From the IMG/VR virus record IMGVR_UViG_3300034072_000758, positions 434,001-498,000 of that record: a stretch of 64,000 bases of DNA, one strand, 5' to 3'. Below, piece by piece: positions 2,246 to 57,023 of the stretch; the first letter of the stretch is position 1, and each line of letters starts with the position of its first letter. Made by a program: the position numbers and the translations under genes. A model generated the notes under the pieces. The model was not told the origin of the DNA, ran no database searches, and saw only the letters and a list, made by a program, of their open reading frames with translations.

Positions 2246-2290
2246 AGATAAATTCCTAACATAACCAATGACTGTTGGCAACACTATGGC

Positions 2291-28967: not shown

Positions 28968-29345
28968 GTGCCAAAGGTTTATCAAAATTTGTCTGGCACG
29001 ACAAAAGACTCTTTTAAGATCGGCAAGAACGGTCCTGAAATCATTCGTGGATACGGAGAGCCAGAGGTCGAAGCTACAAATGGTAGTCTATACGTCGATC
29101 AAACCGATGGTGAACTTTATCAATATAAAAAAGACGAATGGGTTCTCCTGTCCAAGGACTACGCGAGCTTCCATTATCTGTCCCTGTTGGCCCAGCACGA
29201 GACGATCCAGCACATAGCCACTCTCATGTGTCAGGCAAAAGAAAAGAGCCAATTCCCGTGGAAAGTGACTCTTACTTTATTCGGACTATTTGCCGCGTTT
29301 GCGATCCCCGGCGTGATCCTTATCTGGTTATTCTTTCCCGACTAA
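28968..29345 (+). CDS. membrane-anchored paralog of the 48531..48965 N-terminal domain
   Basis: GGAG RBS then GTG; VYQNLSGTT.D.F.IGK.GP..; C-terminal TM helix. Confidence 0.6.
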   Translation: MPKVYQNLSGTTKDSFKIGKNGPEIIRGYGEPEVEATNGSLYVDQTDGELYQYKKDEWVLLSKDYASFHYLSLLAQHETIQHIATLMCQAKEKSQFPWKVTLTLFGLFAAFAIPGVILIWLFFPD

Positions 29346-30605
29346 CCATTCACCCGGAAGATCATAATTGTCGATGATCTTCTTGTTCATGTCGCCATAC
29401 AGGCTGATCGACGGCTTGCGATTGATCAGATCATTGTGGAACGCCTGAACCTGTTCGCGGGACGTGCGTTCAGCTTCTTCGAGGATTCCGCCCACGTTAT
29501 CGTAGCTTCGGCCTTCATCGAACATGTCGGCCAGAACGAATTGCATCAGTTCGCCGTATTCTTCATCGACCTTGGAAATTTCCACAAGGGCCTTATTCTT
29601 CGCCAGCGTCCAGTCGGCATCGGTGATACCGTTTTCGGCGATGGTGCGCAGCGTTTTACCGATGGCGATAAAGCATTTCTTGAGGTTCTTTTTCGTCGTT
29701 TCGAACGCGATGACAAAGAGTTCCGTATCGTTGGAATAGTGGGCGCTGACATGGTAGCACAGACCCAACTTCTCGCGTACTTCAACGAACAGAGGCGACG
29801 ACATGCCACCAGACAGAACATCGGTGAGAAGATAGGACAGAACGCGCTCGTCACGCTTTACCGGAAAGGCGATGCGACCCTTAACCGAACCCTTCGGGGG
29901 AGACGGAATAACGACTGTGCCACCCACGTATTCCGCCTTTTCAGTCGGAACCTTTTGGCCTTGAGGCAGCTTCATGACGTGGCTGGCTTTCACCTTTTTC
30001 ACGAACTCGTCATGATCGACATTACCACCACAGAACACGATCATGTTCTGGGTGAAATAGTTGGCCTTGTGATAGACCGCCAGATCGTCTTCGACGTTGA
30101 TATTTGTGATGGTTTCTTCCGTGCCGAGCGTTTCGCGGCCCAGAGCGCTGCCGGGATATGCCGCCGCTTTCAGGCCGTTGTAGACCATCTTGCCGCCATT
30201 GGTTTGGGTCATGGCGAACTCTTGGAGGATGACATCGCGTTCCTTCTCGATTTTGTTGAAAGCGATGTTGGTCACCATGTCGGTGAGAAGGTCGAGCGAA
30301 TTATCCACAAACTTACCGAGACCTTCCACGAAATAAACCGTGTGGCGGGCCGAGGTGTACGCATTGAAGGACGAGCCGAGCGATTCGATTTCGGATGAAA
30401 TAGCGAACGAATCTTCCCGGTTGGAAGTACCGTTAAACATCATGTGTTCGAGGAAGTGAGCGGTGCCTTGCTTTACGTCATTTTCATCACTGGAACCAGC
30501 GTTGACGGCGACCGCAACAAGCGAAGAGTGAGTTTGCCTTTGAGCGGTGATGACCGTTAGGCCATTGTCGAGGACGGTGGTTCTGATGTTTGTGTAAAAT
30601 GACAT
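29328..30605 (-). CDS. M16 family (pitrilysin-like) zinc peptidase
   Basis: LDNGL.V, V.AGS.DE...G.AHFLEHMMFNGT (HXXEH), FNAYTS, GGMSSPLF.EVREKLGLCY. Confidence 0.93.
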   Translation of the reverse strand: MSFYTNIRTTVLDNGLTVITAQRQTHSSLVAVAVNAGSSDENDVKQGTAHFLEHMMFNGTSNREDSFAISSEIESLGSSFNAYTSARHTVYFVEGLGKFVDNSLDLLTDMVTNIAFNKIEKERDVILQEFAMTQTNGGKMVYNGLKAAAYPGSALGRETLGTEETITNINVEDDLAVYHKANYFTQNMIVFCGGNVDHDEFVKKVKASHVMKLPQGQKVPTEKAEYVGGTVVIPSPPKGSVKGRIAFPVKRDERVLSYLLTDVLSGGMSSPLFVEVREKLGLCYHVSAHYSNDTELFVIAFETTKKNLKKCFIAIGKTLRTIAENGITDADWTLAKNKALVEISKVDEEYGELMQFVLADMFDEGRSYDNVGGILEEAERTSREQVQAFHNDLINRKPSISLYGDMNKKIIDNYDLPGEWLVGKE

Positions 30606-30738: not shown

Positions 30739-31269
30739 ATGGGTACTCGTCATTTGGTGGTTGTTCGCTTGAACAATGAAGTAAAAGTCGCTCAGTATGG
30801 TCAATTCGACGGTTATATGAGCGGGGCTGGTAGAACAATACAACGTATTTTGTCGTTTGCTGATTTGAATTTGCTAAAAGAGTTAGTAGCAAAATGTTGG
30901 TGGATCACAGATGATGAACACAACAAGATGATGGCTGATCTTGGTGTCAAAAGTAATGACGGTTGGATTAGCTTGGATGACAGTAAAAAAATTGAAAAAG
31001 CTTATCCGCATCTTCATCGCAATTGTAGCGCCGAAGTCATCACTGAAATTCTCAACAGCGAAAACGGATTACCGCTTCAAAATTCATACGATTTTGGAGA
31101 AGATGGACTTTTTTGCGAATACACCTATACGGTCGATCTCGACAATGATACATTGACCGCACAAAGCGGGGGTTTGGACGGCAAAGTCCTTTTCCAAGGA
31201 CCAATCAACACGCTCCACACAATCCCACCATTTGAAGACCCCAAAGACGAAGAAGAAGACGAAGAATGA
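30739..31269 (+). CDS. conserved phage hypothetical protein (MGTR family)
   Basis: MGTRH...[12 protein letters not shown] and LFCEY.Y.VDLD motifs. Confidence 0.7.
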
Positions 31270-33047
31270 CCAAGACAAACATGCGAACGCAAACCTGTGG
31301 TGAATTGACCGTGGCCTATACTGGCGACACGGTGAGCCTGTGTGGCTGGATTCACCGCAAGCGAGATCATGGCGGCTTGCTGTTCATCGACTTACGTGAC
31401 AATTACGGACTGACCCAGATCGTAATGCAAAAGACCGCTGCCTGTTTCTCGGTGGTGGAGCACCTTCGCCAAGAAAGCGTAATTCGCGTAATCGGTAAGG
31501 TCGTAACGAGAACGGAAAATACACAAAACCCGAACCTCGCAACCGGGCAGATCGAAGTCATCGCTTCGGAAATTACAGTTCTGTCGGAAGCCTCGGAACT
31601 TCCAGTGCCAGTGTTCGGTGATGTTCAGTATCCAGAAGACCAACGTTTGAAGCATCGCTATCTCGATCTTCGCCGTGACGAACTCCACTCAAACATCCTG
31701 CTGCGCTCCAAGATCATTAGCTACCTGCGTAGGTTCATGGAGGGCGAAGGCTTTACTGAGTTTCAGACGCCTATTCTGACCGCATCTTCCCCAGAAGGCG
31801 CGCGCGACTTCCTCATTCCATCACGCCTTCATCCCGGCAAATTTTATGCCCTGCCTCAAGCACCACAACAATTCAAGCAACTTTTGATGGTGTCTGGCTT
31901 TGACCGCTATTTCCAGATCGCACCTTGCTTCCGCGACGAAGCCGCCCGTGCTGACCGGTCGCCGGGTGAGTTCTATCAACTCGATATTGAAATGTCTTTC
32001 GTCAATCAGGAAGACGTTTTCTCTCAGGCTGAACGTATCCTTCATTCGACCTTTACTGAGTTCTCGAACGGGAAGACCGTAAGTTCGTACCCATTCCAGC
32101 GAATCACCTACAAGGACTCGATGGAAAAATACGGCAACGATAAGCCCGATCTTCGTAACCCAATCGTCATGAGCGATGCTTCGCTTTATTTCGTGAACGG
32201 CGGCTTCGGTCTGTTTGAGAAAATGGCCAGCGACGGCAAAAGCTCGATCTGGGCTATTCCGGTCAAGGGCAATGGAAACATCAATCGCAAATTCTGCGAC
32301 AAGATGAACTCTTGGGCCATCGAAGAAGGCCAAAAAGGTATGGGATATATCTATTGGAACGAAGAAGGCGCACAAGGCCCAATCGCCAAGAATCTCCATG
32401 CCGATAAGCTGGGACAATTGGAAGCCGCCTATGAATTGGGTAACGGTGATGCCATATTCTTCGTGGCCGGGATCAAAAAGGATTTCCTCAAGTTCTGCGG
32501 ATTCGCCCGCACCAAGATCGCCGAAGAACTCGGTCTGATCAAGGATGATCATTTCCATTTCTGCTGGGTGGTGGATTTCCCAATGTTCGAACTATCGAAC
32601 GAAGGCAAAATCGATTTCGCCCACAATCCGTTCTCTATGCCACAAGGCGAAATGGAAGCTCTGGAAACCAAGAACCCGCTGGATATTCTGGCCTATCAGT
32701 ACGACATCGTGTGTAACGGCATCGAACTGTCCTCCGGGGCTATTCGTAACCACCGACCCGACATCATGCTCAAGGCTTTTGAAATCGCTGGTTACAAGGC
32801 CGAGGAAGTGGAAGAACGCTTCGGCGGTATGTTGAACGCATTCCGCTATGGCGCGCCTCCCCACGGTGGTCTGGCTCCCGGTGTTGACCGCATGGTCATG
32901 ATGCTGGCTAATAAATCCTCCATCCGAGACATCATCGCTTTCCCGCTGAATCAGCAAGGACAAGATTTGATGATGAACGCACCATCGGAAGTCACGGATA
33001 AACAACTCAAAGAGTTGAACATCCGAACATACAAGCCATTGAGCTAA
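31266..33047 (+). CDS. aspS: aspartyl-tRNA synthetase, probably non-discriminating
   Basis: [55 protein letters not shown]; His in RDHGG is the ND-type residue. Confidence 0.97.
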
Positions 33048-33478: not shown

Positions 33479-34705
33479 TTACAGCCACACTTTCCCATAT
33501 GCTGATTGAAGAATAGACGGGATGAACACTTTACCACCTTCGTCCTGATAGTTTTCCAGAACAGCCAACAAAGTTCTACCAACCGCCAGTCCAGACCCAT
33601 TTAAGGTGTGGACTGGTTCTTTTTTGCCTTGAGCATTGGTGAAGCGAGTCTTCATGCGATTGGCTTGGAAATCGCCACAATTGGATACCGAGCTAATCTC
33701 ACGATAAGTTTTCTGTGATGGCACCCAAACTTCGATGTCGTAAGTCTTTTGTGCTCCGAAGCCCATGTCACCCGCGCATAATAACATGATGCGATATTTT
33801 ATACCCAATGAAGTGAGGATGTTTTCAGCACAAGATAACATGAACTCGTGCTCTTGTGCCGACTTCTCAGGCGTAGTGATCGACACCATTTCAACTTTGT
33901 TAAATTGATGCTGGCGTAAGATGCCATGCGTGTCCTTACCAGCGCTTCCGGCTTCGGATCGGAAACATGGGGTCAGCGCAGTTAGACGAAGGGGTAATTC
34001 ACCCTCAGCCAAAATCTTATCAGCGACATAATTTGTCAAAGTCACTTCGGCGGTCGGGATCAGAAAATGTTCATCAGTGTTCACCGAGTACAGGTCATCG
34101 ATGAATTTAGGAAGCTGACCAGTTCCATACAAGGCCGTGTCTTTCACCAGCAACGGAGTGGAGCATTCCTCGAATCCATTTTTAACCTGACATTCAAGCA
34201 TATACTGCCCGATAACTCGTTCGAGACGTGCCACGGGGCCGCGCATGAATGAGAAGCGTGTGCCAGACATCGCTACCCCCGCTGATATATCGAGGCCGTA
34301 TTTGCTCCCGATCTCAACATGGTCTTTCGGGTCTTTTATGGAACGGAGCGGAATATCATTGACACGAACCAATTGATTGTCGTGCTCGTCTTTTCCAACC
34401 GGAACGTCATTGGCTGGGACATTTGGGATGTCGAACAAATAGTCTTCAAGTTCCCCGGCCAGATAATCGACCAAGCCTTCGGCAGTAGTTATTTCGGCCT
34501 TCACCGCCACCCCGGTTTCATGGTCTTTATTCCGCGCGGCATCCTTGCGCTTGGCGTACAAAGCCTCAAGATCAGTCAACGATTTACGATGATCTGTATC
34601 CTTTTTGAGAATGTCCGAAACTATCCGAGACCCGTCAAGCCCTCTCTTATTCAACCCGCTGGCAACGGCTTCTGGATTCTCGCGGATGGTCTTTATATTG
34701 ATCAT
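33479..34705 (-). CDS. serS: seryl-tRNA synthetase
   Basis: N-terminal coiled arm, LIPTAEV.LTN, FRSEAGSAGKDT.GILRQHQFNKVE, YREISS.SNC.DFQA.R, TLNGSGLAVGRT. Confidence 0.97.
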   Translation of the reverse strand: MINIKTIRENPEAVASGLNKRGLDGSRIVSDILKKDTDHRKSLTDLEALYAKRKDAARNKDHETGVAVKAEITTAEGLVDYLAGELEDYLFDIPNVPANDVPVGKDEHDNQLVRVNDIPLRSIKDPKDHVEIGSKYGLDISAGVAMSGTRFSFMRGPVARLERVIGQYMLECQVKNGFEECSTPLLVKDTALYGTGQLPKFIDDLYSVNTDEHFLIPTAEVTLTNYVADKILAEGELPLRLTALTPCFRSEAGSAGKDTHGILRQHQFNKVEMVSITTPEKSAQEHEFMLSCAENILTSLGIKYRIMLLCAGDMGFGAQKTYDIEVWVPSQKTYREISSVSNCGDFQANRMKTRFTNAQGKKEPVHTLNGSGLAVGRTLLAVLENYQDEGGKVFIPSILQSAYGKVWL

Positions 34706-39348: not shown

Positions 39349-39378
39349 AAAAAAGCCCGCTTCAAGCGGGCTTTTTTT
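39349..39378. terminator. bidirectional intrinsic terminator
   Basis: AAAAAAGCCCGC-TTCAA-GCGGGCTTTTTTT. Confidence 0.85.
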
Positions 39379-40567
39379 AATAATTTGCTAATATGTTTCT
39401 ATAATATTTTAAATACAAGTTCGAGTTTCCCGAAACGTTATTCATAGTTACAATAATATCCAGATTGTCTATGTAAAACCTCACAAATTCGGTAGCATCA
39501 ATTGGTAATGTGACATCACTTAACATGCTTATGGAACGAAGTGCCGAGTCATAATAATAAATCTCGTGTGGCGCACTAGGAGAACTTGAATTTTTCATAT
39601 TTGTTATGATCAAATATTTGTTAGTTCGATTTGATATTTTATGTATATGGCTGTTCCCATTACTTATTATGCTTCTGGTATAATTGTTTATATTGCCCTG
39701 TAACGAACTCGTCTCATCGGTTACAACGGACGTAGAGGGGTTATAAGAAAAATAGGAAAATTGAGGATGCGTTACGCTGCTTGAACCATGATGTAGCAAC
39801 AATTCATTGTTGGCCGGGGATAACATCGCGCGAGACGCAAGGTTACCAGATACAAAGGTATATGGGCTTGTGTATGTTTGTTCATACGTGATGCCGGTAG
39901 ACGTATTGAACTTGAAGAAATATAAATAGCTTCCATTCATATTCCACATCACAAAAGTGTCGTCATTAATCCATTCTACTTCACACACCGCACCAAATGA
40001 GCTATAACCCGGAATACCGGTAGGCACAGTAATAGTAAAATTAGAAGCCGGGGTCAAAACCGTTACATATACCGTTCCACTAAGAACACTCGCCGTAGCC
40101 GCCCAATCATTTGTTTTATGCCAACCATTTGCGGTAGTCGTACTCGCAGCCGAGGTAGCATGGTAAATAGAGCGTGATGTCGATGTAGAGGCAAATGGAA
40201 ATGTTGTTAACACATCAGAACCACTTACAGTTGTCTGTGGATAACCACCAAAAACCGAGGGTTTATGAAGCGCTCTCGTAAAAGTAAAAGGACCACTACT
40301 ATAAAAACCTGATGAATTTGCGGTATCTTTCACATACAAATCGGTCCCGGTATTCAACATAATAGCATATCTTATACCAGACACATAATAGCCGCTCGAA
40401 GCAGTGGTTGTATCTTTTCCGTATGAATACAGGCCATTTACCATTGGTGCTGTACTTGGGTGTACTTTACCATTAAAGCTTACAAAATACGGGGTGTGAT
40501 CAAACCTCGTACTTGAGGTCTGAGCGGGCGATGTACTTTTTCCTTCAACCAAATAATGATACAGCAT
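39377..40567 (-). CDS. AT-rich Ser/Thr/Tyr-rich virion accessory protein (possible receptor-binding)
   Basis: TAATG-coupled to the collagen fibre; beta-rich composition. Confidence 0.6.
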   Translation of the reverse strand: MLYHYLVEGKSTSPAQTSSTRFDHTPYFVSFNGKVHPSTAPMVNGLYSYGKDTTTASSGYYVSGIRYAIMLNTGTDLYVKDTANSSGFYSSGPFTFTRALHKPSVFGGYPQTTVSGSDVLTTFPFASTSTSRSIYHATSAASTTTANGWHKTNDWAATASVLSGTVYVTVLTPASNFTITVPTGIPGYSSFGAVCEVEWINDDTFVMWNMNGSYLYFFKFNTSTGITYEQTYTSPYTFVSGNLASRAMLSPANNELLLHHGSSSVTHPQFSYFSYNPSTSVVTDETSSLQGNINNYTRSIISNGNSHIHKISNRTNKYLIITNMKNSSSPSAPHEIYYYDSALRSISMLSDVTLPIDATEFVRFYIDNLDIIVTMNNVSGNSNLYLKYYRNILANY

Positions 40568-41847
40568 TATGAGAAGTTCTTCCCGATCTGGGTTAGAAGA
40601 TACGTTAAACCGCCGTCATATGTAAATACAGTGTAAACATCTACCGCACCATTCGACGTGGATTGTGTATACGTAACATTCTGGGGGGTTCTGGCCGATG
40701 CTGGCCATGTTACCGAAAATGCTCCGCCCCCCTGCCGCACCGCAACAATCGCAGTATATGTTCTGGATGTCGAAACCGCATTCGTGAAGGCAAAACTTGT
40801 AGCCCCGGTTAAGGTAATATTATAAAAATAGTTAGCACCTAGATCGAGCGTAACAGTTCCAGACGCACTAGCAACCACCGCAACATTTTCATAAGTTGGC
40901 CCCATCGGACCTTGAATACCTTGAATGCCCTGAACACCTTGAATACCTTGAACACCTTGAATACCCTGAGCACCAGTATTACCTATAGGGCCTTGTATAC
41001 CTTGTATACCTTGCGGACCTTGTGGTCCTTGCTCACCTCTAACATACCCAGCGTTCCCAATCGATCCATTGGAATATAGAATATTAAGCCAGCCGGTAAT
41101 CGCGTTGGCCGAAACAATACCATTACCATATGGACCTGCTGGTCCGGTCGCGCCTTGGTTACCCTGTGGCCCCTGTGGGCCGATCACCGAACCAGCATCA
41201 ATCGTCGCTCCCGTTGAGAGAGTCAGAATAAGGCGTCCTGAGCCATTGACCACTGCTGCTGTAACACTGGTCCCACTTGGACCCACCACGGCACCGGCAT
41301 TGATCACGGTTCCAGACGTAAGCGTCAGATAAAGTTGACCGTTCGTAACTGTAGCAGACTGTACACCAACACCATTGGTCCCAGAAGCCCCATCTAAGCC
41401 CTTTACGTAGCCAGCATTGATCGTGAGGCCGTTGGACATATTAATGAAGAGATCGCCGCTCTGAGCTACGTATGCGCCTTGTACGCCTACACCGTTTTCA
41501 CCCACAACATCACCCACGTCGATGACCGTGTTATCAGTCAAAGTGAAAATCAGATTTTGGTTCAGAATTTGCGCGTTGGAAACGCCGACGCCTTGCGGAC
41601 CAGCCTCGCCAGTAGGAACGATCCCGGCATCAATGACTGAGTTATCGGTCATGAGCATCAGAAGATGATTCTCACCGTTTACGTACTCAACGTATACGTT
41701 GGCAACACCCACCCCACGCGGGCCTTCTGGCCCCATAACAACAGGGATTTTATCGACCACGGCATTAGGTATTATCGTGTCGTTTGTATTGTTGAACATA
41801 ACTGGTGGAGTACCACCGGGAAGACGGGCATTGATAATATCTGGCAT
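40567..41847 (-). CDS. collagen-like tail fibre protein
   Basis: (GXY)n tracts, several GVGVxxAxVxxGxL.LTLS.G..I.AG.V.G repeats, C-terminal TLDL.....NITLTG...F.FTN domain; late promoter. Confidence 0.85.
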
Positions 41848-41906: not shown

Positions 41907-42373
41907 GTCCCTCCGCTATTGGGTCGTGTGAACATTCTAGGTAAGTAACACGTTCTCATACAGGCTCGCGGTTAAGTCTATGGGTGATCTGAGTGGCCTA
42001 AGATGTATGTGGTTCGATTCCACTATGGGATACCAATTCGCTCAAATGAGCAAACGAATTGTTGTTTAAAGGGTGTATGGAGGCACGTTCTGTCCGAGTG
42101 GGGACAGAAAGGCGGGGGTTCGAATCCCCGTTGTCCGAATCAGGTGGTGTTTTCGAGGGAGACCTTGGAAATGTGGGTTCGAGTCCCACAGAGACAGAAC
42201 AACAGACCAACGGCGAGAGTTGCGTATCTATAAGTTCAGGCCCGAAAGGGATAGAGTGAAGCTGAGGATGCCGCGAAGGAAGTAAGCGCGGATTCGATGA
42301 CGCTGAAACGAATATTACACCCTGACGCTCTCAATGATTAGGCCCTCGGACATACCATCCGAGGGCCTTTTTT
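41907..42373 (+). ncRNA. unidentified structured ncRNA (~460 nt) with a tRNA-like 5' module and two further T-loop hairpins
   Basis: T-loops at 42013, 42119, 42178; CCA at 42033-35; helices 42070-77/42316-23 and 42087-94/42193-200; GNRA hairpins; terminator 42340..42373. Confidence 0.7.
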
Positions 42374-42704
42374 ATATGTATAGCAACACGTCCATTAAAA
42401 GATTATCTATACATTCCACCGAGGGCTTGTCCGTGTGCGGGAAATTAGTGTACATCAAACGATTATCATTGAACGTAAATTCATACTTATATTCTTGAAT
42501 ACCATTATTTCTAAGCTTATACGTGATGTCATCAATAAAAATCTCCCAAATAAAAACCGAATCAATTTTGTCTATTTCAATACGTTTATACTTATGTCCA
42601 TAGCCCTCACGACATTGCGTCCATTTACCCAAGCTCTCTATTTGCTTAAAAGCATTTTCAAGAGACCTGAGTAAATGTCGTTGTTCCTGCGGTGTGTAAA
42701 TCAT
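42372..42704 (-). CDS. hypothetical protein, shared C-terminal motif
   Basis: Start MIYTPQ gives an ATGA overlap with the K+ channel stop; ends ECIDNLLMDVLLYI. Confidence 0.6.
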   Translation of the reverse strand: MIYTPQEQRHLLRSLENAFKQIESLGKWTQCREGYGHKYKRIEIDKIDSVFIWEIFIDDITYKLRNNGIQEYKYEFTFNDNRLMYTNFPHTDKPSVECIDNLLMDVLLYI

Positions 42705-43413: not shown

Positions 43414-43490
43414 TGGCAGGGGTGGAGAGATTCGAACTCCCATCGCGCAGTTTTGGAGACTGCCGCTCTAACCGTTGGAGCTACACCCCT
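43414..43490 (-). tRNA. trnW: tRNA-Trp(CCA)
   Basis: AGGGGTG/CACCCCT, GCAGT-CTCCAAA-ACTGC, G73-CCA. Confidence 0.95.
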
Positions 43491-43502
43491 ATAGGCGATC
43501 AA

Positions 43503-43781
43503 TCACTTGACCGCAAAGGAAGAAATGAGCTTACAACTCGTTTTTACAAACCCTACATAACGAGGGTCCGAGAAACGGTCGAAGTCATTCAAATAATCGA
43601 AGTCCGCCTTGTCGATTTCATACACATGATATTCGACGGCTGGTGAATGCTGTTCTACAACCGTAAAACTACGGTCGCTTCTCAAGCCACGTTCTTTATC
43701 TGCGATCTTCACAGCTTCAATCGGCCTTAAGTTATTCGTCAAGGCGACGATATGATTTTGATTCAAAACAGCGGTACGCAT
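43503..43781 (-). CDS. hypothetical protein inside the tRNA array
   Basis: AAGGAG RBS, 92 aa. Confidence 0.6.
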   Translation of the reverse strand: MRTAVLNQNHIVALTNNLRPIEAVKIADKERGLRSDRSFTVVEQHSPAVEYHVYEIDKADFDYLNDFDRFSDPRYVGFVKTSCKLISSFAVK

Positions 43782-43841
43782 ACTATTACTCCTTACCCGA
43801 CATTAATAATTTATTTACATTATCAAAGTCAATTTTATTTT

Positions 43842-43932
43842 TGGAGGACGTGGTGGGACTCGAACCCACGGTGGTCTATGTTACGACAACAGGTTAAGAG
43901 CCTGTCCCTCTCGCCGCTGAGGTGACACGTCC
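43842..43932 (-). tRNA. tRNA-Lys(CTT) with long variable arm (91 nt)
   Basis: GGACGTG/CACGTCC, ACAGG-CTCTTAA-CCTGT, ~19-nt variable region with a GTC/GAC stem, U73-CCA. Confidence 0.85.
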
Positions 43933-44026
43933 GTATCAAAAATGTAGGGAGATCGGGTTCACCACAATCATGCTGGTACACAAGGTCGTCACATGATTAG
44001 TAACCCACTAGGGCATGGCTCCAGCT

Positions 44027-44102
44027 TGGTGAACACGGTGGGGGTCGAACCCACGACCTACTGATTAAAAGTCAGTTGCTCTACCTACTGAGCTACGTGT
44101 TC
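44027..44102 (-). tRNA. trnK: tRNA-Lys(TTT), canonical
   Basis: GAACACG/CGTGTTC, ACTGA-CTTTTAA-TCAGT, A73-CCA. Confidence 0.95.
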
Positions 44103-44103
44103 G

Positions 44104-44183
44104 TGCGCCCTGTCGGACTCGAACCGACACTCGTTAGAAGCAGATTTTAAGTCTGCCGGGTCTACCAATTTCCCCAAGGGCGC
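44104..44183 (-). tRNA. trnL: tRNA-Leu(TAA)
   Basis: GCGCCCT/AGGGCGC, GCAGA-CTTAAAA-TCTGC, type II arm, A73, no CCA. Confidence 0.92.
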
Positions 44184-44233
44184 TTAGGTACTTTTCTTGT
44201 AAACATCAAAGATGATTTTGGCAACATCTTTGT

Positions 44234-44309
44234 TGGCGAGGATAGAAGGATTCGAACCTCCGACACATGCGTTCGAAGCGCATTGCTCTGTCCACTGAGC
44301 TATATCCCC
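44234..44309 (-). tRNA. trnR: tRNA-Arg(TCG)
   Basis: GGGGATA/TATCCTC, ATGCG-CTTCGAA-CGCAT, G73-CCA. Confidence 0.93.
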
Positions 44310-44310
44310 G

Positions 44311-44395
44311 TGCGCCGAGAGGGATTCGAACCCTCATACCATTACGGTGTCCGTTTTTGAAACGGGTGCGTCTACCAAAGTTCCGCCACCAGCGC
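44311..44395 (-). tRNA. trnL: tRNA-Leu(CAA)
   Basis: GCGCTGG/TCGGCGC, CCCGT-TTCAAAA-ACGGA, type II arm, A73. Confidence 0.9.
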
Positions 44396-44446
44396 ATAGA
44401 AAACCTTTAATATAGATCGTTATCCACATCCATATTAAAGGTTATG

Positions 44447-44530
44447 AGGATGTAGAGGGACTCGAACCCCCGATGGTCTTTTGACAACGGATTAAAAGCC
44501 CGTCCCTCTCGCCGCTGAGGTGATACATCC
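44447..44530 (-). tRNA. tRNA-Lys(TTT) with long variable arm
   Basis: GGATGTA/TACATCC, ACGGG-CTTTTAA-TCCGT, GTC-AAAA-GAC variable hairpin, D-arm identical to the 43842 tRNA, U73, no CCA. Confidence 0.85.
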
Positions 44531-44545
44531 ATAGTAGTATTTGTT

Positions 44546-44622
44546 TGGAGGACGTGGTGGGACTCGAACCCACAACATTCGGTTTAAGAGACCGACGCTC
44601 TAACCATTGTAGCTACACGTCC
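44546..44622 (-). tRNA. trnK: tRNA-Lys(CTT), short variable loop
   Basis: Same acceptor and T-arm as 43842..43932; TCGGT-CTCTTAA-ACCGA; U73-CCA. Confidence 0.93.
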
Positions 44623-44639
44623 GTATCAAACAAATACTG

Positions 44640-44712
44640 CGCGGATCAAGGGACTCGAACCCATAACCCTCTGTTTAGAAGACAGATGCTCGTCCAATTG
44701 AGCTTCATCCGC
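44640..44712 (-). tRNA. trnR: tRNA-Arg(TCT)
   Basis: GCGGATG/GATCCGC (7:66 mismatch), TCTGT-CTTCTAA-ACAGA. Confidence 0.88.
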
Positions 44713-44721
44713 ATAGTAGTG

Positions 44722-44807
44722 TGTGCCGAGGGGGACTCGAACCCCCACGCCCATTACAGGCCCCGGTTTCTGAAACCGGGAAGTCTACCAAATTTCATCA
44801 TCAGCAC
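44722..44807 (-). tRNA. trnL: tRNA-Leu(CAG)
   Basis: GTGCTGA/TCGGCAC, CCGGT-TTCAGAA-ACCGG, type II arm. Confidence 0.9.
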
Positions 44808-44832
44808 GTATGCTCTTTCGAGCAAAGTCTTG

Positions 44833-44912
44833 TACGGGTGAGAGGACTCGAACCTCCACGATTGCTCGCTAGAACCTAAACCTAGTGCGTCTACCAGTTT
44901 CGCCACACCCGC
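44833..44912 (-). tRNA. trnL: tRNA-Leu(TAG)
   Basis: GCGGGTG/CACCCGT, CTAGG-TTTAGGT-TCTAG, type II arm. Confidence 0.92.
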
Positions 44913-44913
44913 G

Positions 44914-44986
44914 CACTGCCAGTAGGACTCGAACCTACAACCTTCTGATTCGTAATCAGATGCTCATCCAGTTGAGCTATGGCAGC
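44914..44986 (-). tRNA. trnR: tRNA-Arg(ACG)
   Basis: GCTGCCA/TGGCAGT, TCTGA-TTACGAA-TCAGA. Confidence 0.92.
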
Positions 44987-44992
44987 ATAAAG

Positions 44993-45102
44993 CAACAAGA
45001 CGGTGGGGTTCGAACCCACAACCTTTCGGCTCCGACTTTGACCGCAACGGCTTTTCGCAAACCATTACGTGCGTGTGTATACCCATTCCACCACGCCAAG
45101 TT
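44993..45102 (-). ncRNA. oversized tRNA-like RNA (110 nt) without a canonical anticodon loop
   Basis: T-arm GTGGG-TTCGAAC-CCCAC, type II D-arm GTG-GAATGGGTATA-CAC, imperfect acceptor AACTTGGCG/CGTCTTGTT, ~55 nt multi-hairpin centre. Confidence 0.65.
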
Positions 45103-45110
45103 ACTTCAAG

Positions 45111-45195
45111 TGTCCATGAAAGGATTCGAACCTTCACGCCCATTACAGGCAACAGCCTCTCAAGCTGCCGTGGCTACCAATTACACCACACGGAC
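45111..45195 (-). tRNA. trnL: tRNA-Leu(GAG)
   Basis: GTCCGTG/CATGGAC, GCAGC-TTGAGAG-GCTGT, type II arm. Confidence 0.92.
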
Positions 45196-45204
45196 ATACG
45201 CAAG

Positions 45205-45321
45205 TGCGTTCGGGAGGATTCGAACCTCCAACCTCTATACTCGTTTGATCGTCATCCGACCAGTATAGCGGTATCCAACCCTCTAATGGGCTGGCGTGGC
45301 TACCAATTTCACCACGAGCGC
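45205..45321 (-). ncRNA. oversized Leu-like tRNA (117 nt) with 7-bp anticodon stem and ~45-nt variable arm
   Basis: GCGCTCG/CGAACGC acceptor, Leu-type D-arm, CCAGCCC-ATTAGA-GGGTTGG, CTATACT/AGTATAG arm, GGAGG-TTCGAAT-CCTCC, A73. Confidence 0.7.
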
Positions 45322-45331
45322 ATATTACGAG

Positions 45332-45406
45332 CGGGACTGGCAGGATTCGAACCTGCGACCTTCGGTTTCGTAGACCGGCGCTCTTATTCCGCTGAGCTAC
45401 AGTCCC
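45332..45406 (-). tRNA. trnR: tRNA-Arg(ACG), second copy
   Basis: GGGACTG/CAGTCCC, CCGGT-CTACGAA-ACCGA. Confidence 0.92.
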
Positions 45407-54058: not shown

Positions 54059-54436
54059 TTAAACTTGATCGAGATCGAGTATTTGGTACGATTCGATACC
54101 ATTTATATTCAACCACTTGTCCAAAACATACATAGCGTTAGTATCGCAGCCCTCCGAATCCGGCACAAGGGTGTAAGCTCTCCCGGTATAAGTCGTACCT
54201 GTTAACTTGTCCTTATCAAAGGTTTCAATAGAAGAAGACACTCTCGCAACGCCTTCATAAACGTTGTGACCGACAAAGTGCTTACTAGAGACCCCATCAC
54301 TGGTTGCTTCAATAAGCAACCAGCGCTCAAGAAGAACAGATGGGGATTTTTCTATAGACTCTGGATGCCAGATCATCTTAGGTACATGACTCGCATATTT
54401 CCGGGTTTTCTGGGGCAACCGTTGGGGCAGCGTCAT
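54059..54436 (-). CDS. hypothetical protein
   Basis: L..W.LIE.......HFVG.....G.RVSS.IE.FD....G.T..GR.Y.L; true start probably near the nrdA stop. Confidence 0.6.
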   Translation of the reverse strand: MTLPQRLPQKTRKYASHVPKMIWHPESIEKSPSVLLERWLLIEATSDGVSSKHFVGHNVYEGVARVSSSIETFDKDKLTGTTYTGRAYTLVPDSEGCDTNAMYVLDKWLNINGIESYQILDLDQV

Positions 54437-57023
54437 AGTTATTGACGGTGACCTTTTGGATACGGCTGGCCGAGCGAGAGCGCAGATAATAAGTCGTTTT
54501 CAGACCAGATTCCCACGCCATTTTGTACAGGGCCGACAAGACACCAATTCTCTTGTTCTGATCATACTTGTTCAAGTCCAAAAAGATGTTCGTGGACTGC
54601 GCTTGACAAATAAAGGCACCACGAGCCGCCGCGTGACGAATGATGGCCTTCTGTGAAATTTCCCAGACGGTCTTGTAGAGCGAATAGAAATCCGTAGGCA
54701 GGTTCTTAAGGTTCATGATCGAACCCTCGTCTTGTATCAACGTTTGGATCGTTTCGTCATTCCATCGACCGATTGCCTTCAAGTCGGCAACCAAGTGCTT
54801 GTTGATAGAAATGAACTCACCCGACAGAGTTTCACGCTTCAACAGGTTTGACTTCGTAGGCTCTGTACATTCCTCAGCACCAGAAATGTGCGCAATGGAG
54901 GCCGTAGGAGCGATAGCAATCAGCAGGGAGTTGCGAAGGCCATACGTTTTAATATCCGCCTTGAGAGCGTCCCAACGGGCCTTGTCAGATGGTTCTACAC
55001 CTACCAGATCGAATTGGAGATCACCCTTGGCAGCACGGGTCAGGAAGAAGTCTCGGTGAGCACCATGTTTCTTAGCCAGTTCACATGAGGTCTTCAAGGC
55101 TTGGTAATAAATTTCCTCTTGGATCGTAGCAGACAGAGCAACCGCTTCATCGCTCTCGTAAGGAAGACGTAGCTGATAGAAAATATCAGCCAGACCCATC
55201 AGACCCAAACCAACTGGACGCCAGCGCTTGTTAGATGCTTCCGACTCTGGGATCGGATAGAAGTTACGGTCGATAACACGATCAAGATACTTGACCGCAA
55301 TGTCTACGTTCTTTCTCAGCTTTTCTTTGTCGAGCTTGTTGTTCTTGACATAATTACGACCAACATTGATCGAACCAAGGTTACAAACAGCGACTTCATG
55401 GCCTTCCAACGCGGTATAACGATCCGTTGAGTGATCATAACCAAGAATGTTGATATTGTCGTGAAGAATCTTTTCCGGGGACATCGCATTGAATTGTTCA
55501 CGGGTCAATTCGATCTTCTTACCAGAGTTGGTAATTTCGAGAATTTCCGTACACAAATTCGACAGGTGAATGATACCGGAGGACAACTTCTTTTCAACCA
55601 GCTTCACACCATAGACTTCACTATGACCGGCGACCCCGATAGAATCGGCGGTAGTGATCTCAGCAGCATATTTTGTACCGGAGATTGTCTCGATTTGGTC
55701 AGTTGGAAGATGGCGCAGGAACGAACCATTCGTCAATTCGATCTGAATGACTTCCGTTTCCGGGTGAACCTGATTGCCGCGCTTATTAGCGGTATCCTTG
55801 AAGCAAATCCATCCGTTGCCGGTTTCGCTCAAGGTACGAATCATACGCGCATACAGCTTGTGTGCCGGAATTTGTTCAGCGTACTTGCCTTCGCGCTCAA
55901 GCTCAAGATAGCGAGCCTCATAAGCTTCACCGTACAGGTCATTCAATTCTGGCGCGACAGCCGGGTCAAACAGCGACCATTGCTCGTTGGCGACCATACG
56001 CTTCATGAACAAATCGGATACCCAGACCGCGAGGTTCAGGTTGTAGGCGCGCTTTTCCTTTTCACCGGCATTATCGCGCAGTTCCAAGAACTCCATGATG
56101 TCAGCGTGGTGTGTTTCGATATAAACACAAGCCGCACCCTTGCGCTTGCCACCTTGGTTGACAGCAGCAACATATCCGTTATTGGCATGAAGCCAAGGAA
56201 TCAGGCCGTTGGAATTACCGTTTGTGCCTTTGATGAAGCTACCAGACGAGCGGATGCGCGAAGCCGAATAACCGATACCACCAGCATACTTCGACAATTG
56301 ATTAAAGTCCGACTGGCGCTTCGAAATGTCTTTCAGATCATCCAGAGCCGAATCCAACAAATAGCACGACGACATCTGGCTACGTTGAGTTCCCGAATTG
56401 AAAAGCGTCGGCGATGATGTCATGTACTCCAAGCTGGACAGCAGATTATACATTTCGATAACTTCGGAAGCTGTTTCGGCAAGACCAGCAGCTACGCGCA
56501 TGAAGAAATATTGAGGCGTCTCAATGACAACACGTTGTTTCGAGTTCTCGCTTACCTTCGCCGAGGTGTGCTTCAAACAATAGCGATCATATAGCGTTTG
56601 AATACCATGATATTCCAACAGGTTATCGCGCTCAGGCTTAATCGCCGAGTTCAGCTTACGCTTGTTGGCCGAAACCAATTTATACGTTGCTTCGTTAATC
56701 AGACCCAACTCATAACCAGTTTGAATGCTCTGCGAGAACGAATGAATGTCCTGAACAGCCAATTCTTTAGCAATATAGTTCGAGAGAATACGAGCGGCCA
56801 GTGTACCGTATTGCGGATCAGTAATGGCCAAATTGGAAGAGTTCTTTATAGAAATCAAATCGATTTCGCGGGAAGCAACACCGTCAACCAAACTACCAAC
56901 GGTCTTAGTAGCTACCTTAAAGATGTCCAAATCTTTCAGGTCACTCGACACTCTTGTCAGAGAATTAACAATCTTATTCAGGTCAACCTCTTCAAGTTGA
57001 CCATTTCTTTTCTTTACGAACAT
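54378..57023 (-). CDS. nrdA: class Ia ribonucleotide reductase large subunit with ATP cone
   Basis: VKKRNG ATP cone, SPTLFNSG, SSCYL, SNLCTEI, VCNLGS, AIAPTAS, GLKTTYYLR, C-terminal CESC. Confidence 0.96.
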   Translation of the reverse strand: MFVKKRNGQLEEVDLNKIVNSLTRVSSDLKDLDIFKVATKTVGSLVDGVASREIDLISIKNSSNLAITDPQYGTLAARILSNYIAKELAVQDIHSFSQSIQTGYELGLINEATYKLVSANKRKLNSAIKPERDNLLEYHGIQTLYDRYCLKHTSAKVSENSKQRVVIETPQYFFMRVAAGLAETASEVIEMYNLLSSLEYMTSSPTLFNSGTQRSQMSSCYLLDSALDDLKDISKRQSDFNQLSKYAGGIGYSASRIRSSGSFIKGTNGNSNGLIPWLHANNGYVAAVNQGGKRKGAACVYIETHHADIMEFLELRDNAGEKEKRAYNLNLAVWVSDLFMKRMVANEQWSLFDPAVAPELNDLYGEAYEARYLELEREGKYAEQIPAHKLYARMIRTLSETGNGWICFKDTANKRGNQVHPETEVIQIELTNGSFLRHLPTDQIETISGTKYAAEITTADSIGVAGHSEVYGVKLVEKKLSSGIIHLSNLCTEILEITNSGKKIELTREQFNAMSPEKILHDNINILGYDHSTDRYTALEGHEVAVCNLGSINVGRNYVKNNKLDKEKLRKNVDIAVKYLDRVIDRNFYPIPESEASNKRWRPVGLGLMGLADIFYQLRLPYESDEAVALSATIQEEIYYQALKTSCELAKKHGAHRDFFLTRAAKGDLQFDLVGVEPSDKARWDALKADIKTYGLRNSLLIAIAPTASIAHISGAEECTEPTKSNLLKRETLSGEFISINKHLVADLKAIGRWNDETIQTLIQDEGSIMNLKNLPTDFYSLYKTVWEISQKAIIRHAAARGAFICQAQSTNIFLDLNKYDQNKRIGVLSALYKMAWESGLKTTYYLRSRSASRIQKVTVNNYDAAPTVAPENPEICESCT

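What the first reader, a model, noticed from the sequence alone, without database searches (positions are those of the whole stretch)
43842..44622. Four tRNA-Lys genes in two architectures: canonical and long-variable-arm versions of both CTT and TTT
Seen: Lys(TTT) 44027 and Lys(CTT) 44546 are ordinary. Lys(CTT) 43842 and Lys(TTT) 44447 share an identical unusual D region (TCACCTCAGCGGCGAGAGGG, 3-nt linker after the acceptor stem), a GTC/GAC variable hairpin, G1-G2-A3 and U73. The two CTT genes have identical acceptor, T-arm and flanks but different D/anticodon/variable arms, which looks like a module swap. Established: long variable arms are normally limited to Ser/Leu/Tyr/Sec, SerRS reads the variable arm rather than the anticodon, and tRNA-Lys is the target of PrrC and PARIS AriB. 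Inference: these are either nuclease-resistant or decoy Lys tRNAs, or allo-tRNAs charged by the phage SerRS, which would mistranslate Lys codons. Caveat: the arm stem is short (3-4 bp) with about 4 unpaired 3' nt, unlike typical tRNA-Ser.
Basis: partly seen in the sequence, partly recalled or inferred. Interest (0 to 1): 0.8.

Follow-up and report, generated by a model that had tools for sequence, protein, structure and literature searches.

The report
Phage lysine tRNAs on tyrosine-type bodies
This giant phage carries, beside two ordinary lysine tRNAs, two lysine-anticodon tRNAs built on a long-armed, tyrosine-tRNA-like body; they belong to a conserved family found almost only in phage-like DNA, including the model phage phiCbK, and may keep lysine decoding going when ordinary lysine tRNA is attacked.

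Summary
ARAGORN and Rfam call four tRNA-Lys genes on the minus strand. Two are canonical (76 and 77 nt). Two are long (91 nt CUU, 85 nt UUU) and share an identical 20-nt D region, a 3-nt 8-9 linker, a 3-bp variable hairpin with a 4-nt 3' tail, and U73.

They are not oddities of this window. I collected 45 distinct relatives, mostly from large phage contigs. Cultured carriers include Caulobacter phiCbK-like and Brevundimonas jumbo phages. The same strict pattern hit only 2 places in 185,579 species genomes.

Stems covary strongly (96.6% paired, 16 of 21 pairs compensatory), with a normal 7/5 acceptor/T layout. The body is closest to bacterial tRNA-Tyr, not tRNA-Ser.

Charging by SerRS is unlikely:
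- G73 never occurs in the family.
- The variable hairpin is missing in about 40% of members.
- phiCbK-like carriers gave no SerRS match.

Best reading: these are functional Lys decoders on a swapped body. They are probably charged by LysRS through the anticodon, and possibly selected because the body escapes nucleases that target tRNA-Lys. Charging and nuclease resistance are inferred, not shown. I found no paper that describes this architecture.

The parts
43842..43932 (-). Long tRNA-Lys(CUU), 91 nt, subfamily A: 3-nt linker, D region UCACCUCAGCGGCGAGAGGG, 19-nt variable region (U-GUC-8 nt loop-GAC-CACC), U73, CCA encoded
   Evidence: ARAGORN; Rfam 52.1 bits; cloverleaf is the MFE; family model R1 93.3 bits
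44446..44530 (-). Long tRNA-Lys(UUU), 85 nt, subfamily A: same D region, 15-nt variable region (U-GUC-AAAA-GAC-CAUC), U73, CCA not encoded
   Evidence: ARAGORN; Rfam 49.3 bits; R1 90.5 bits; cloverleaf -26.7 vs MFE -30.3 kcal/mol
44027..44102 (-). Canonical tRNA-Lys(UUU), 76 nt, A73; 3' side of the anticodon arm reads AAUCA, the E. coli-type AriB site
   Evidence: AriB site from PMC12409363
44546..44622 (-). Canonical tRNA-Lys(CUU), 77 nt, U73; acceptor stem, T arm and immediate flanks identical to those of the long CUU gene
43414..45406 (-). tRNA gene cluster holding the four Lys genes: Trp, 4 Lys, 5 Leu and 4 Arg called by ARAGORN
   Evidence: terminator-like hairpin 45475-45443(-) just upstream of the cluster
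33479..34705 (-).
   Evidence: Pfam PF00587 2.2e-43 and PF02403 1.7e-10

Best explanation
The two long genes are real, functional elongator tRNAs. They belong to a family, found almost only in phage-like DNA, in which a lysine anticodon (CUU or UUU) sits on a class-II-like, tRNA-Tyr-type body. That body has a 3-nt 8-9 linker, a D stem CC(Y)N with D loop AGYGGCGA, and a 7-22-nt variable region ending in a 4-nt tail (CAYC in 36 of 45 members). The acceptor/T layout is the normal 7/5.

They read AAG and AAA on the ribosome and are most likely charged with lysine. LysRS identity rests mainly on the anticodon. In this window the long CUU tRNA also has exactly the acceptor end of the canonical tRNA-Lys(CUU).

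The swapped body gives the phage a second, structurally different tRNA-Lys pool. I infer that this pool stays usable when ordinary tRNA-Lys, host or phage, is cut by defence tRNases that read the anticodon stem, the D loop and other body parts.

Shown: existence, family membership, structural constraint, Tyr-like body, near-absence from cellular genomes, and carriers with no detectable phage SerRS. Inferred: lysine charging and nuclease evasion.
For: Gene calls.

Family: 45 distinct sequences. In IMG/VR they lie mostly on contigs of 170-607 kb. In GenBank they occur in Caulobacter phiCbK-like phages, Brevundimonas jumbo phages and the uncultured phages LR745206 and LR756502. The same pattern hit only 2 loci in 185,579 species genomes, both dense tRNA arrays.

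Covariation: 96.6% of cells paired, 16 of 21 pairs with changes on both sides, 0 of 500 shuffles reach any observed measure, and sliding the partners collapses the signal.

Decoding role: both anticodons are kept. Sets of two canonical plus two long Lys genes recur in the window, L002, L006, L039 and L059. In the phiCbK-like tRNA clusters fetched, the long genes are the only Lys tRNAs.

Tyr-like body: the 16-mer CCCGAGCGGCGAAGGG, where it lies in a called tRNA in viral contigs, lies in tRNA-Tyr(GUA) or long Lys genes, apart from one aberrant 97-nt gene. Family model R1 scores E. coli tyrU at 64.2 bits, lysT at 53.9, serV at 51.8 and leu at 29.

Discriminator: U 29, A 15, C 1, G 0. This does not fit TyrRS or LeuRS (A73) or SerRS (G73).

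Lys identity: it rests on the anticodon plus A73, and a UUU transplant confers Lys identity in the human system. For class I LysRS, A73 is marginal (PMC9976931). Most alpha-proteobacteria, Caulobacter crescentus among them, use class I LysRS (PMC1475646).

Standard code: standard translation gives strong Pfam matches, for example RNR at 3e-172, and a Walker-A lysine in the UvsX-like protein, so AAR means Lys.

tRNA-Lys as a defence target: AriB cuts between positions 40 and 41 and also reads the D loop and other parts (PMC12409363). A bacterial Schlafen also prefers tRNA-Lys (PMC13056530).

Weak hint: the E. coli-type AAUCA site occurs in 0 of 24 long UUU members and 4 of 16 canonical UUU genes, including the window's own.
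Against: There is no expression, charging or cleavage data for any member. U73 is unusual for tRNA-Lys, and class II LysRS loses activity when A73 is replaced. 5 of 21 long CUU members keep the AAUCA site. PrrC-type enzymes act on the anticodon loop, which a body swap would not protect. The host of this phage is unknown. Its UvsX-like protein is closest to those of Agrobacterium and Sinorhizobium phages, and those host species use class II LysRS. The family was collected with a sequence pattern, so invariance of the D loop, anticodon loop and T loop is partly by construction. Only the acceptor, D-stem, anticodon-stem and variable-arm variation is independent evidence.
Confidence: 0.5

Rival explanations
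1. Plain supply. An old tRNA-Tyr-type gene acquired a Lys anticodon, is charged with Lys, and is kept only as extra decoding capacity for AAA and AAG. The unusual body is a tolerated historical accident with no role in defence.
For: phiCbK-like phages carry only the long forms in their tRNA cluster and no tRNA-Tyr. The phiCbK paper links phage tRNAs to the phage's common codons. Anticodon-centred Lys identity makes such a shift easy.
Against: It does not explain why megaphages keep canonical and long versions of both anticodons side by side on five separate contigs. It also does not explain why the odd features are conserved across very different phages with compensatory changes, or why the family is nearly absent from cellular genomes.
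Confidence: 0.3
2. Serine mis-charging, the reader's allo-tRNA idea. The phage SerRS binds the variable arm and loads serine, so Lys codons are partly read as Ser.
For: The window encodes a SerRS with an N-terminal tRNA-binding arm. Subfamily A, which includes the window's genes, always has a variable hairpin, with compensatory changes. G1-C72, G2-C71 and A3-U70 are present in the window genes. One GenBank record labels a member tRNA-Ser.
Against: G73 occurs in 0 of 45. The hairpin is absent in 19 of 45 and is only 3 bp in the window, followed by 4 unpaired nt. In tRNA-Ser genes from the same collection the variable stem is longer and has about 1 unpaired nt on each side. 2-71 is G-C in only 27 of 45. 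The layout is 7/5, not allo-tRNA-like. R1 scores serV below tyrU and lysT. No Caulobacter phage appears among the organisms matching the phage SerRS, although phiCbK-like phages carry the family. The same acceptor end sits on a canonical class-I-type tRNA-Lys(CUU).
Confidence: 0.05
3. Tyrosine mis-charging. TyrRS still recognises the Tyr-type body and U35, and loads tyrosine, so Lys codons are partly read as Tyr.
For: The D arm and variable-region layout are Tyr-like. U35 is kept. 15 of 45 members have A73 and most have G1-C72.
Against: A73 is a conserved Tyr identity element, yet 29 of 45 members, and all 11 of subfamily A including the window's genes, have U73. Positions 34 and 36 are changed. 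U35 and U36 are LysRS determinants. Proteome-wide Lys-to-Tyr replacement would hit catalytic lysines.
Confidence: 0.05
4. Not used in translation. The long forms act as decoys or sponges for a tRNA-Lys nuclease or another host factor, serve a non-ribosomal process, or are decaying pseudogenes.
For: AriB work raises the possibility that over-expressed viral tRNAs inhibit by competition. The 85-nt gene's cloverleaf is 3.6 kcal/mol above its single-sequence MFE.
Against: Both anticodons are maintained, the anticodon loop is perfect, CCA is encoded in 36 of 45, and all four stems covary, including the acceptor. This argues for decoding and against decay. A decoy would be expected to mimic the canonical body rather than differ from it.
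Confidence: 0.07

Closest known systems
Bacterial tRNA-Tyr (class II tRNA, e.g. E. coli tyrU) and phage-encoded tRNA-Tyr(GUA)
   Same: D arm (E. coli UU-CCCG-AGCGGCCAA-AGGG against family UGU-CCCG-AGCGGCGA-AGGG). Short variable hairpin followed by 3-4 unpaired nt. G13-A22-type mismatch closing the D stem. 7/5 layout. Some phage tRNA-Tyr genes share the exact 16-mer and the 3-nt linker.
   Different: The anticodon is YUU, not GUA. The discriminator is mostly U, not A. The variable hairpin can be absent. The tRNA-Tyr genes resident in the same contigs are usually not close relatives.
Phage T5 tRNA-Lys(UUU), which escapes PARIS AriB (PMC11464382, PMC12409363)
   Same: A phage-encoded tRNA-Lys that differs from the host type. 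The proposed benefit is to keep Lys decoding alive when host tRNA-Lys is cut. The window's long UUU tRNA has C41, as T5's tRNA does.
   Different: T5 uses point changes (U39A, A41C) on an ordinary class I body. Here the whole body is of another class. Resistance is not tested here.
allo-tRNAs (Mukai et al. 2017, PMC5389517)
   Same: Long variable arm combined with anticodons outside Leu/Ser/Tyr; found by sequence mining.
   Different: allo-tRNAs have an 8/4 or 9/3 acceptor/T layout (abstract of PMC5389517). Their serine identity is recalled from memory, not read here. This family is 7/5, lacks G73 and often lacks the arm helix.
Nematode nev-tRNAs (class II tRNAs with Gly, Ile and other anticodons, charged with Leu) - recalled from memory, not checked here
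   Same: A class II body carrying a class I anticodon.
   Different: They are eukaryotic, Leu-type bodies, reported as mis-charged. No relation by descent.

Membership tests
Canonical bacterial tRNA-Lys (class I tRNA) | Anticodon YUU in a 7-nt loop with U33 and A37 | tested here: met
   CU-CUU-AA and CU-UUU-AA
Canonical bacterial tRNA-Lys (class I tRNA) | 4-5-nt variable loop, 2-nt 8-9 linker, AGCUCAG-type D arm | tested here: not met
   Variable region of 19 and 15 nt, 3-nt linker, D arm CCUC-AGCGGCGA-GAGG. R1 scores canonical Lys genes at 45-61 bits against 79-99 for the family.
Canonical bacterial tRNA-Lys (class I tRNA) | Discriminator A73 | tested here: not met
   U73 in both long genes, and also in the window's canonical CUU gene. 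Family: U 29, A 15, C 1.
Bacterial tRNA-Tyr | Class II body: CCCG/AGGG-type D arm and a short variable hairpin with a 3' unpaired tail | tested here: met
   Shared 16-mer with phage tRNA-Tyr; E. coli tyrU is the best non-family hit among E. coli tRNAs.
Bacterial tRNA-Tyr | Anticodon GUA and A73 | tested here: not met
   YUU anticodon; U73 in the window genes.
tRNA-Ser / SerRS substrates | Long helical variable arm in the Ser orientation, conserved across the family | tested here: not met
   3-bp stem plus 4 unpaired nt in the window. No hairpin in 19 of 45 members and only 2 bp in 5 more.
tRNA-Ser / SerRS substrates | G73 discriminator; G2-C71 | tested here: not met
   G73 in 0 of 45. G2-C71 in 27 of 45, though present in the window genes.
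tRNA-Ser / SerRS substrates | Serylation by SerRS | not testable with these tools
   Needs an aminoacylation assay.
allo-tRNA | 8/4 or 9/3 acceptor/T-stem layout | tested here: not met
   7-bp acceptor and 5-bp T stem, both 100% paired with compensatory changes.
Defence-evading phage tRNA (T5 tRNA-Lys type) | Phage-encoded isoacceptor of a tRNA that defence nucleases target | tested here: met
   Lys anticodons on a 516-kb phage contig. tRNA-Lys is a target of AriB and of a bacterial Schlafen.
Defence-evading phage tRNA (T5 tRNA-Lys type) | Resistance to cleavage and rescue of infection | not testable with these tools
   Only a weak sequence hint: the AAUCA site is absent from 24 of 24 long UUU members.

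The most novel reading that the evidence does not exclude
The long tRNAs are deliberately mis-acylated, with Tyr through their Tyr-type body or with Ser through the phage SerRS. Infection would then partly recode AAA and AAG, giving programmed, phage-driven mistranslation of lysine codons.
Probability: 0.07. Interest if true: 0.95.

Novelty: new variant of a known kind. Interest (0 to 1): 0.65.

Why it matters
Textbooks restrict long variable regions to tRNA-Leu, -Ser, -Tyr and -Sec. Here a conserved, covarying family puts lysine anticodons on such a body. It is found almost only in phage-like DNA and is present in a tractable model phage, phiCbK on Caulobacter.

If the body swap protects against nucleases that target tRNA-Lys, that would be a new way for phages to evade defence: replacing the whole scaffold rather than a few anticodon-arm bases. 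It would also help explain why huge phages keep duplicate isoacceptor sets.

If the tRNAs are charged by class I LysRS regardless of body and discriminator, they are a natural example of how anticodon-centred identity frees the rest of a tRNA to evolve. They could also serve as a scaffold for engineering orthogonal tRNAs.

Some genome annotations mislabel a member: one record calls a long UUU gene tRNA-Ser.

Tried and rejected
- Megablast of the tRNA cluster against 50,697 phage records found nothing. Distant blastn found only generic tRNA matches.
- Searches for papers on class-II-like tRNA-Lys in phages found none. The phiCbK genome paper lists tRNAs but does not remark on their shape.
- I compared D regions by edit distance against the other tRNAs in loci fetched without D-arm bias. 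The single nearest was a tRNA-Tyr, but tRNA-Tyr as a class was not closest. The Tyr link therefore rests on the shared 16-mer and on model scores against E. coli tRNAs, not on co-resident Tyr genes.
- A search for class II LysRS in phages found none in phiCbK-like or Brevundimonas phages, and only 23% identical paralog-level hits in LR745206 and LR756502. An orthogonal phage LysRS partner is therefore not supported, though class I LysRS was not searched.
- A sigma-70 promoter scan near the cluster gave no more sites than shuffles.
- Rfam found nothing for the T-arm-rich region 41935-42375.
- The allo-tRNA layout is rejected on the 7/5 covariation.

Full report
OBSERVATION. ARAGORN finds 18 tRNA genes in the window, 14 of them in a minus-strand cluster at 43414-45406. 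Four are tRNA-Lys:
- 43842-43932, CTT, 91 nt
- 44027-44102, TTT, 76 nt
- 44446-44530, TTT, 85 nt
- 44546-44622, CTT, 77 nt

All four pass the Rfam tRNA gathering score. The two long genes share the D region CACCTCAGCGGCGAGAGGG exactly; 100 shuffles of the window give no such match.

Read as cloverleaves, both long genes have the same parts:
- a 7-bp acceptor stem
- three nucleotides (U-C-A) where tRNAs normally have two (positions 8 and 9)
- a D stem CCUC/GAGG with D loop AGCGGCGA
- a normal anticodon arm (CU-CUU-AA or CU-UUU-AA)
- a variable region of 19 or 15 nt, made of one unpaired U, a GUC/GAC stem and four unpaired nt (CACC or CAUC)
- a T arm, then U73

The 91-nt gene folds into this cloverleaf as its minimum-energy structure. 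For the 85-nt gene the cloverleaf lies 3.6 kcal/mol above the single-sequence optimum.

The long and canonical CTT genes share 16 identical nt at the 5' end and 30 at the 3' end, flanks included, and differ only in the D, anticodon and variable arms.

A FAMILY, NOT A ONE-OFF. The exact D region occurs in two IMG/VR contigs. One is a 516,805-bp contig with the same gene order and spacing, probably the window's source. The other is a 415,409-bp relative (L002). L002 also has two long and two canonical Lys genes, with different stem sequences.

Looser patterns recovered more members, giving 45 distinct family sequences after removing duplicates. In IMG/VR they lie mostly on contigs of 170-607 kb.

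BLAST against GenBank phages shows cultured carriers: Caulobacter phages phiCbK, Karma, Magneto, Swift and Rogue, Brevundimonas jumbo phages, and the uncultured phages of 634,780 and 642,428 bp, LR745206 and LR756502. GenBank calls them tRNA-Lys. One record labels the UUU member 'tRNA-Ser'. The phiCbK genome paper does not comment on their shape.

The same strict pattern hit only two loci in one genome from each of 185,579 bacterial and archaeal species. Both loci are dense tRNA arrays.

REAL, CONSTRAINED tRNAs. On the 45-sequence alignment, the cloverleaf without the variable arm is paired in 96.6% of cells. 16 of 21 pairs show changes on both sides (211 cells). No shuffle of 500 reaches any observed measure. 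Sliding the 3' partners by 1-3 columns drops pairing to 38-52%. The acceptor stem (7 bp) and T stem (5 bp) are 100% paired, so the layout is the ordinary 7/5.

A caveat applies. Members were collected with a pattern that fixes parts of the D loop, anticodon loop and T loop, so invariance there is by construction. The stems were free to vary.

Three subfamilies differ in the D arm. Subfamily A holds the window's genes: 11 sequences, all U73, both anticodons, and always a variable hairpin of 3-6 bp. Its stem sequences differ between members while pairing is kept (GUC/GAC, AGC/GCU, ACAAGC/GCUUGU, CAGGU/GCCUG, GUGCG/CGCAC).

Across the whole family the hairpin is absent in 19 of 45 and is only 2 bp in 5 more. 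The features shared across the family are the expanded variable region (7-22 nt) and its 4-nt 3' tail, CAUC or CACC in 36 of 45.

THE BODY IS TYROSINE-LIKE. Where the 16-mer CCCGAGCGGCGAAGGG (the D arm of subfamily B) lies in a called tRNA in viral contigs, that tRNA is a tRNA-Tyr(GUA) or a long Lys gene, apart from one aberrant 97-nt gene. Those phage tRNA-Tyr genes also have the 3-nt linker and a CACC tail.

A covariance model of the family (R1) gives these scores:
- family members: 72-99 bits (nearly all 79 or more)
- those tRNA-Tyr genes: 68-79 bits
- canonical Lys genes: 45-61 bits
- Ser genes: about 42-51 bits
- Leu genes: about 32-44 bits

Because those Tyr genes were fetched through the D-arm motif, I repeated the test on E. 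coli K-12 tRNAs. tyrU scores 64.2 bits, lysT 53.9, serV 51.8 and leuQPV 29, even though only lysT shares the anticodon loop.

The tRNA-Tyr genes that sit in the same contigs as long Lys genes are mostly not close to them. The family is therefore an old lineage that moves among phages, not a set of repeated local conversions.

WHICH AMINO ACID? This cannot be measured here. The sequence evidence points to lysine.

- Both anticodons are maintained, often in the same phage. Sets of two canonical plus two long Lys genes recur on five separate contigs. In the phiCbK-like tRNA clusters fetched, the long genes are the only Lys tRNAs.
- The discriminator is U in 29 members, A in 15, C in 1 and G in none. 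[quoted passage not shown] SerRS reads G73 together with the long variable arm (PMC7609411). That LeuRS needs A73 and that G73 is universal in tRNA-Ser I state from general knowledge. A base that drifts between U, A and C fits none of these enzymes.
- Lys identity rests on the anticodon plus A73. Transplanting UUU confers Lys identity on other tRNAs in the human system. For class I LysRS, A73 is marginal. Most alpha-proteobacteria, Caulobacter crescentus among them, use class I LysRS (PMC1475646), and the cultured carriers infect Caulobacterales. That a class I enzyme approaches from the side away from the variable region is my inference from general aaRS knowledge.
- In this window the long CUU tRNA carries exactly the acceptor stem, discriminator and T arm of the canonical CUU tRNA. 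An enzyme that reads the anticodon and acceptor end sees the same signals on both.
- AAR means lysine in this phage. Standard translation gives strong family matches and places Lys in the Walker A motif of the UvsX-like protein.

THE SERINE HYPOTHESIS. The window does encode a SerRS with its tRNA-binding arm (33479-34705), along with CysRS and AspRS. Against Ser charging:
- G73 is absent from the family.
- The arm helix is short in the window and dispensable family-wide.
- 2-71 is G-C in only 27 of 45 members.
- The model score for serV is lower than for tyrU and lysT.
- No Caulobacter phage appears among the organisms matching the phage SerRS at E<=1e-5, although phiCbK-like phages carry the family.

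I put Ser charging at about 5%, and Tyr charging at about the same.

WHY SWAP THE BODY? tRNA-Lys is a repeated target of defence tRNases. PrrC is the classic case. PARIS AriB cuts between positions 40 and 41; phage T5 escapes with two point changes, and chimeric tRNAs show that AriB also reads the D loop and other parts of the tRNA (PMC12409363). A bacterial Schlafen also prefers tRNA-Lys(UUU) (PMC13056530).

A tRNA that keeps only what LysRS needs, and replaces the D arm, the 8-9 junction and the variable region, would present a different surface to such enzymes. This is inference.

The only sequence hint is weak, because the sequences are not independent. The E. coli-type AAUCA site is absent from all 24 long UUU members and present in 4 of 16 canonical UUU genes, including the window's own. 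It is also present in 5 of 21 long CUU members.

The main rival is plain extra supply on an accidentally odd scaffold. It explains phiCbK, but not the side-by-side duplicate sets in megaphages.

CONTEXT. The window has 43-49% G+C. Its UvsX-like recombinase is 54.7% identical to that of Agrobacterium phage Atu_ph07 (490 kb) and about 53% to those of other jumbo myoviruses. I found no class II LysRS in phiCbK-like or Brevundimonas phages.

VERDICT. I found no paper that describes a class-II-like tRNA-Lys in phages. I rate it a new variant of a known kind (phage-encoded variant tRNAs), testable in a cultured system.

Noticed in passing
window 45205-45321 (-): A 117-nt tRNA-like gene that Rfam scores at 34.8 bits but ARAGORN does not call. 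Its acceptor and D arm resemble tRNA-Leu (compare L002 tRNA-Leu(UAA)). The anticodon arm looks aberrant by eye (about 7 bp with a 6-nt loop, or 5 bp with an 8-nt loop holding UUAG). The variable arm is very long (about 7 bp with a roughly 20-nt loop).
   Followed up: partly
window 45003-45100 (-): A perfect T-arm hairpin (GTGGGTTCGAACCCCAC) between tRNA-Arg(ACG) and tRNA-Leu(GAG), with tRNA-like sequence upstream. Neither ARAGORN nor Rfam calls a gene there. It may be a degraded or very unusual tRNA.
   Followed up: no
window 41935-42375 (+): A non-coding stretch with three T-arm-like hairpins (GGTTCGATTCC, GGGGGTTCGAATCCCC, GTGGGTTCGAGTCCCAC), ending in a strong terminator-like hairpin and T run near 42340-42375. 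It folds better than all 100 shuffles (z = -2.8). There is no Rfam match and no tRNA or tmRNA call.
   Followed up: partly
window 911-2284 (-), 31266-33047 (+), 33479-34705 (-), 22063-23820 (+): The phage encodes CysRS, a bacterial-type AspRS (with GAD domain), SerRS and a glutamine-dependent NAD synthetase. It also encodes an M16 peptidase (29328-30605), an SPFH protein (24355-25710) and a class I ribonucleotide reductase large subunit (54378-57023).
   Followed up: partly
L002 7782-7870 (-); L037 1187-1280 (-); L072 2916-3006 (+): Related contigs carry long tRNAs (89-94 nt) with the anticodon UAU (Ile, AUA codon). They have an ordinary D arm plus a variable hairpin, so a second class I anticodon sits on a long-armed tRNA.
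   Followed up: no
L048, L070, L004, L052, L054, L060 (several genes each): ARAGORN calls many 80-95-nt genes with anticodons for Asn, Gly, Asp, Gln, Cys, Trp, Thr, Met, Glu and Pro in these phage-like contigs. L070 also has two CUU tRNAs on yet another long-armed body. Extended variable regions on non-Leu/Ser/Tyr tRNAs may be a wider phage phenomenon. I did not check whether some are introns or miscalls.
   Followed up: no
L012 6142-6238 (-): A 97-nt gene with the same D arm (CCCGAGCGGCGAAGGG), T arm, CAUC tail and U73 as the Lys family, but an oversized anticodon loop. ARAGORN calls it Ala(GGC).
   Followed up: no
L038 2912-2988 and 4963-5038 (+); L041 1016-1092 (+): Contigs that carry long Lys tRNAs also carry tRNAs with the anticodon CUA (amber suppressors, labelled 'Pyl' by ARAGORN). 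These phages may read UAG as a sense codon.
   Followed up: no
L075 3096-3186 (KY555146.1, Caulobacter phage Ccr32): The GenBank annotation labels the gene at the position of the long UUU family member as 'tRNA-Ser, codon recognized UCG', a likely mis-annotation caused by the long variable region. The Ccr32 sequence itself was not read here.
   Followed up: partly
window 40567-41847 (-) and 39377-40567 (-): A 426-aa protein with collagen-like G-x-x repeats, followed by a 396-aa Ser/Thr-rich protein, just downstream of the non-coding region. They are probably fibre or decoration proteins.
   Followed up: no
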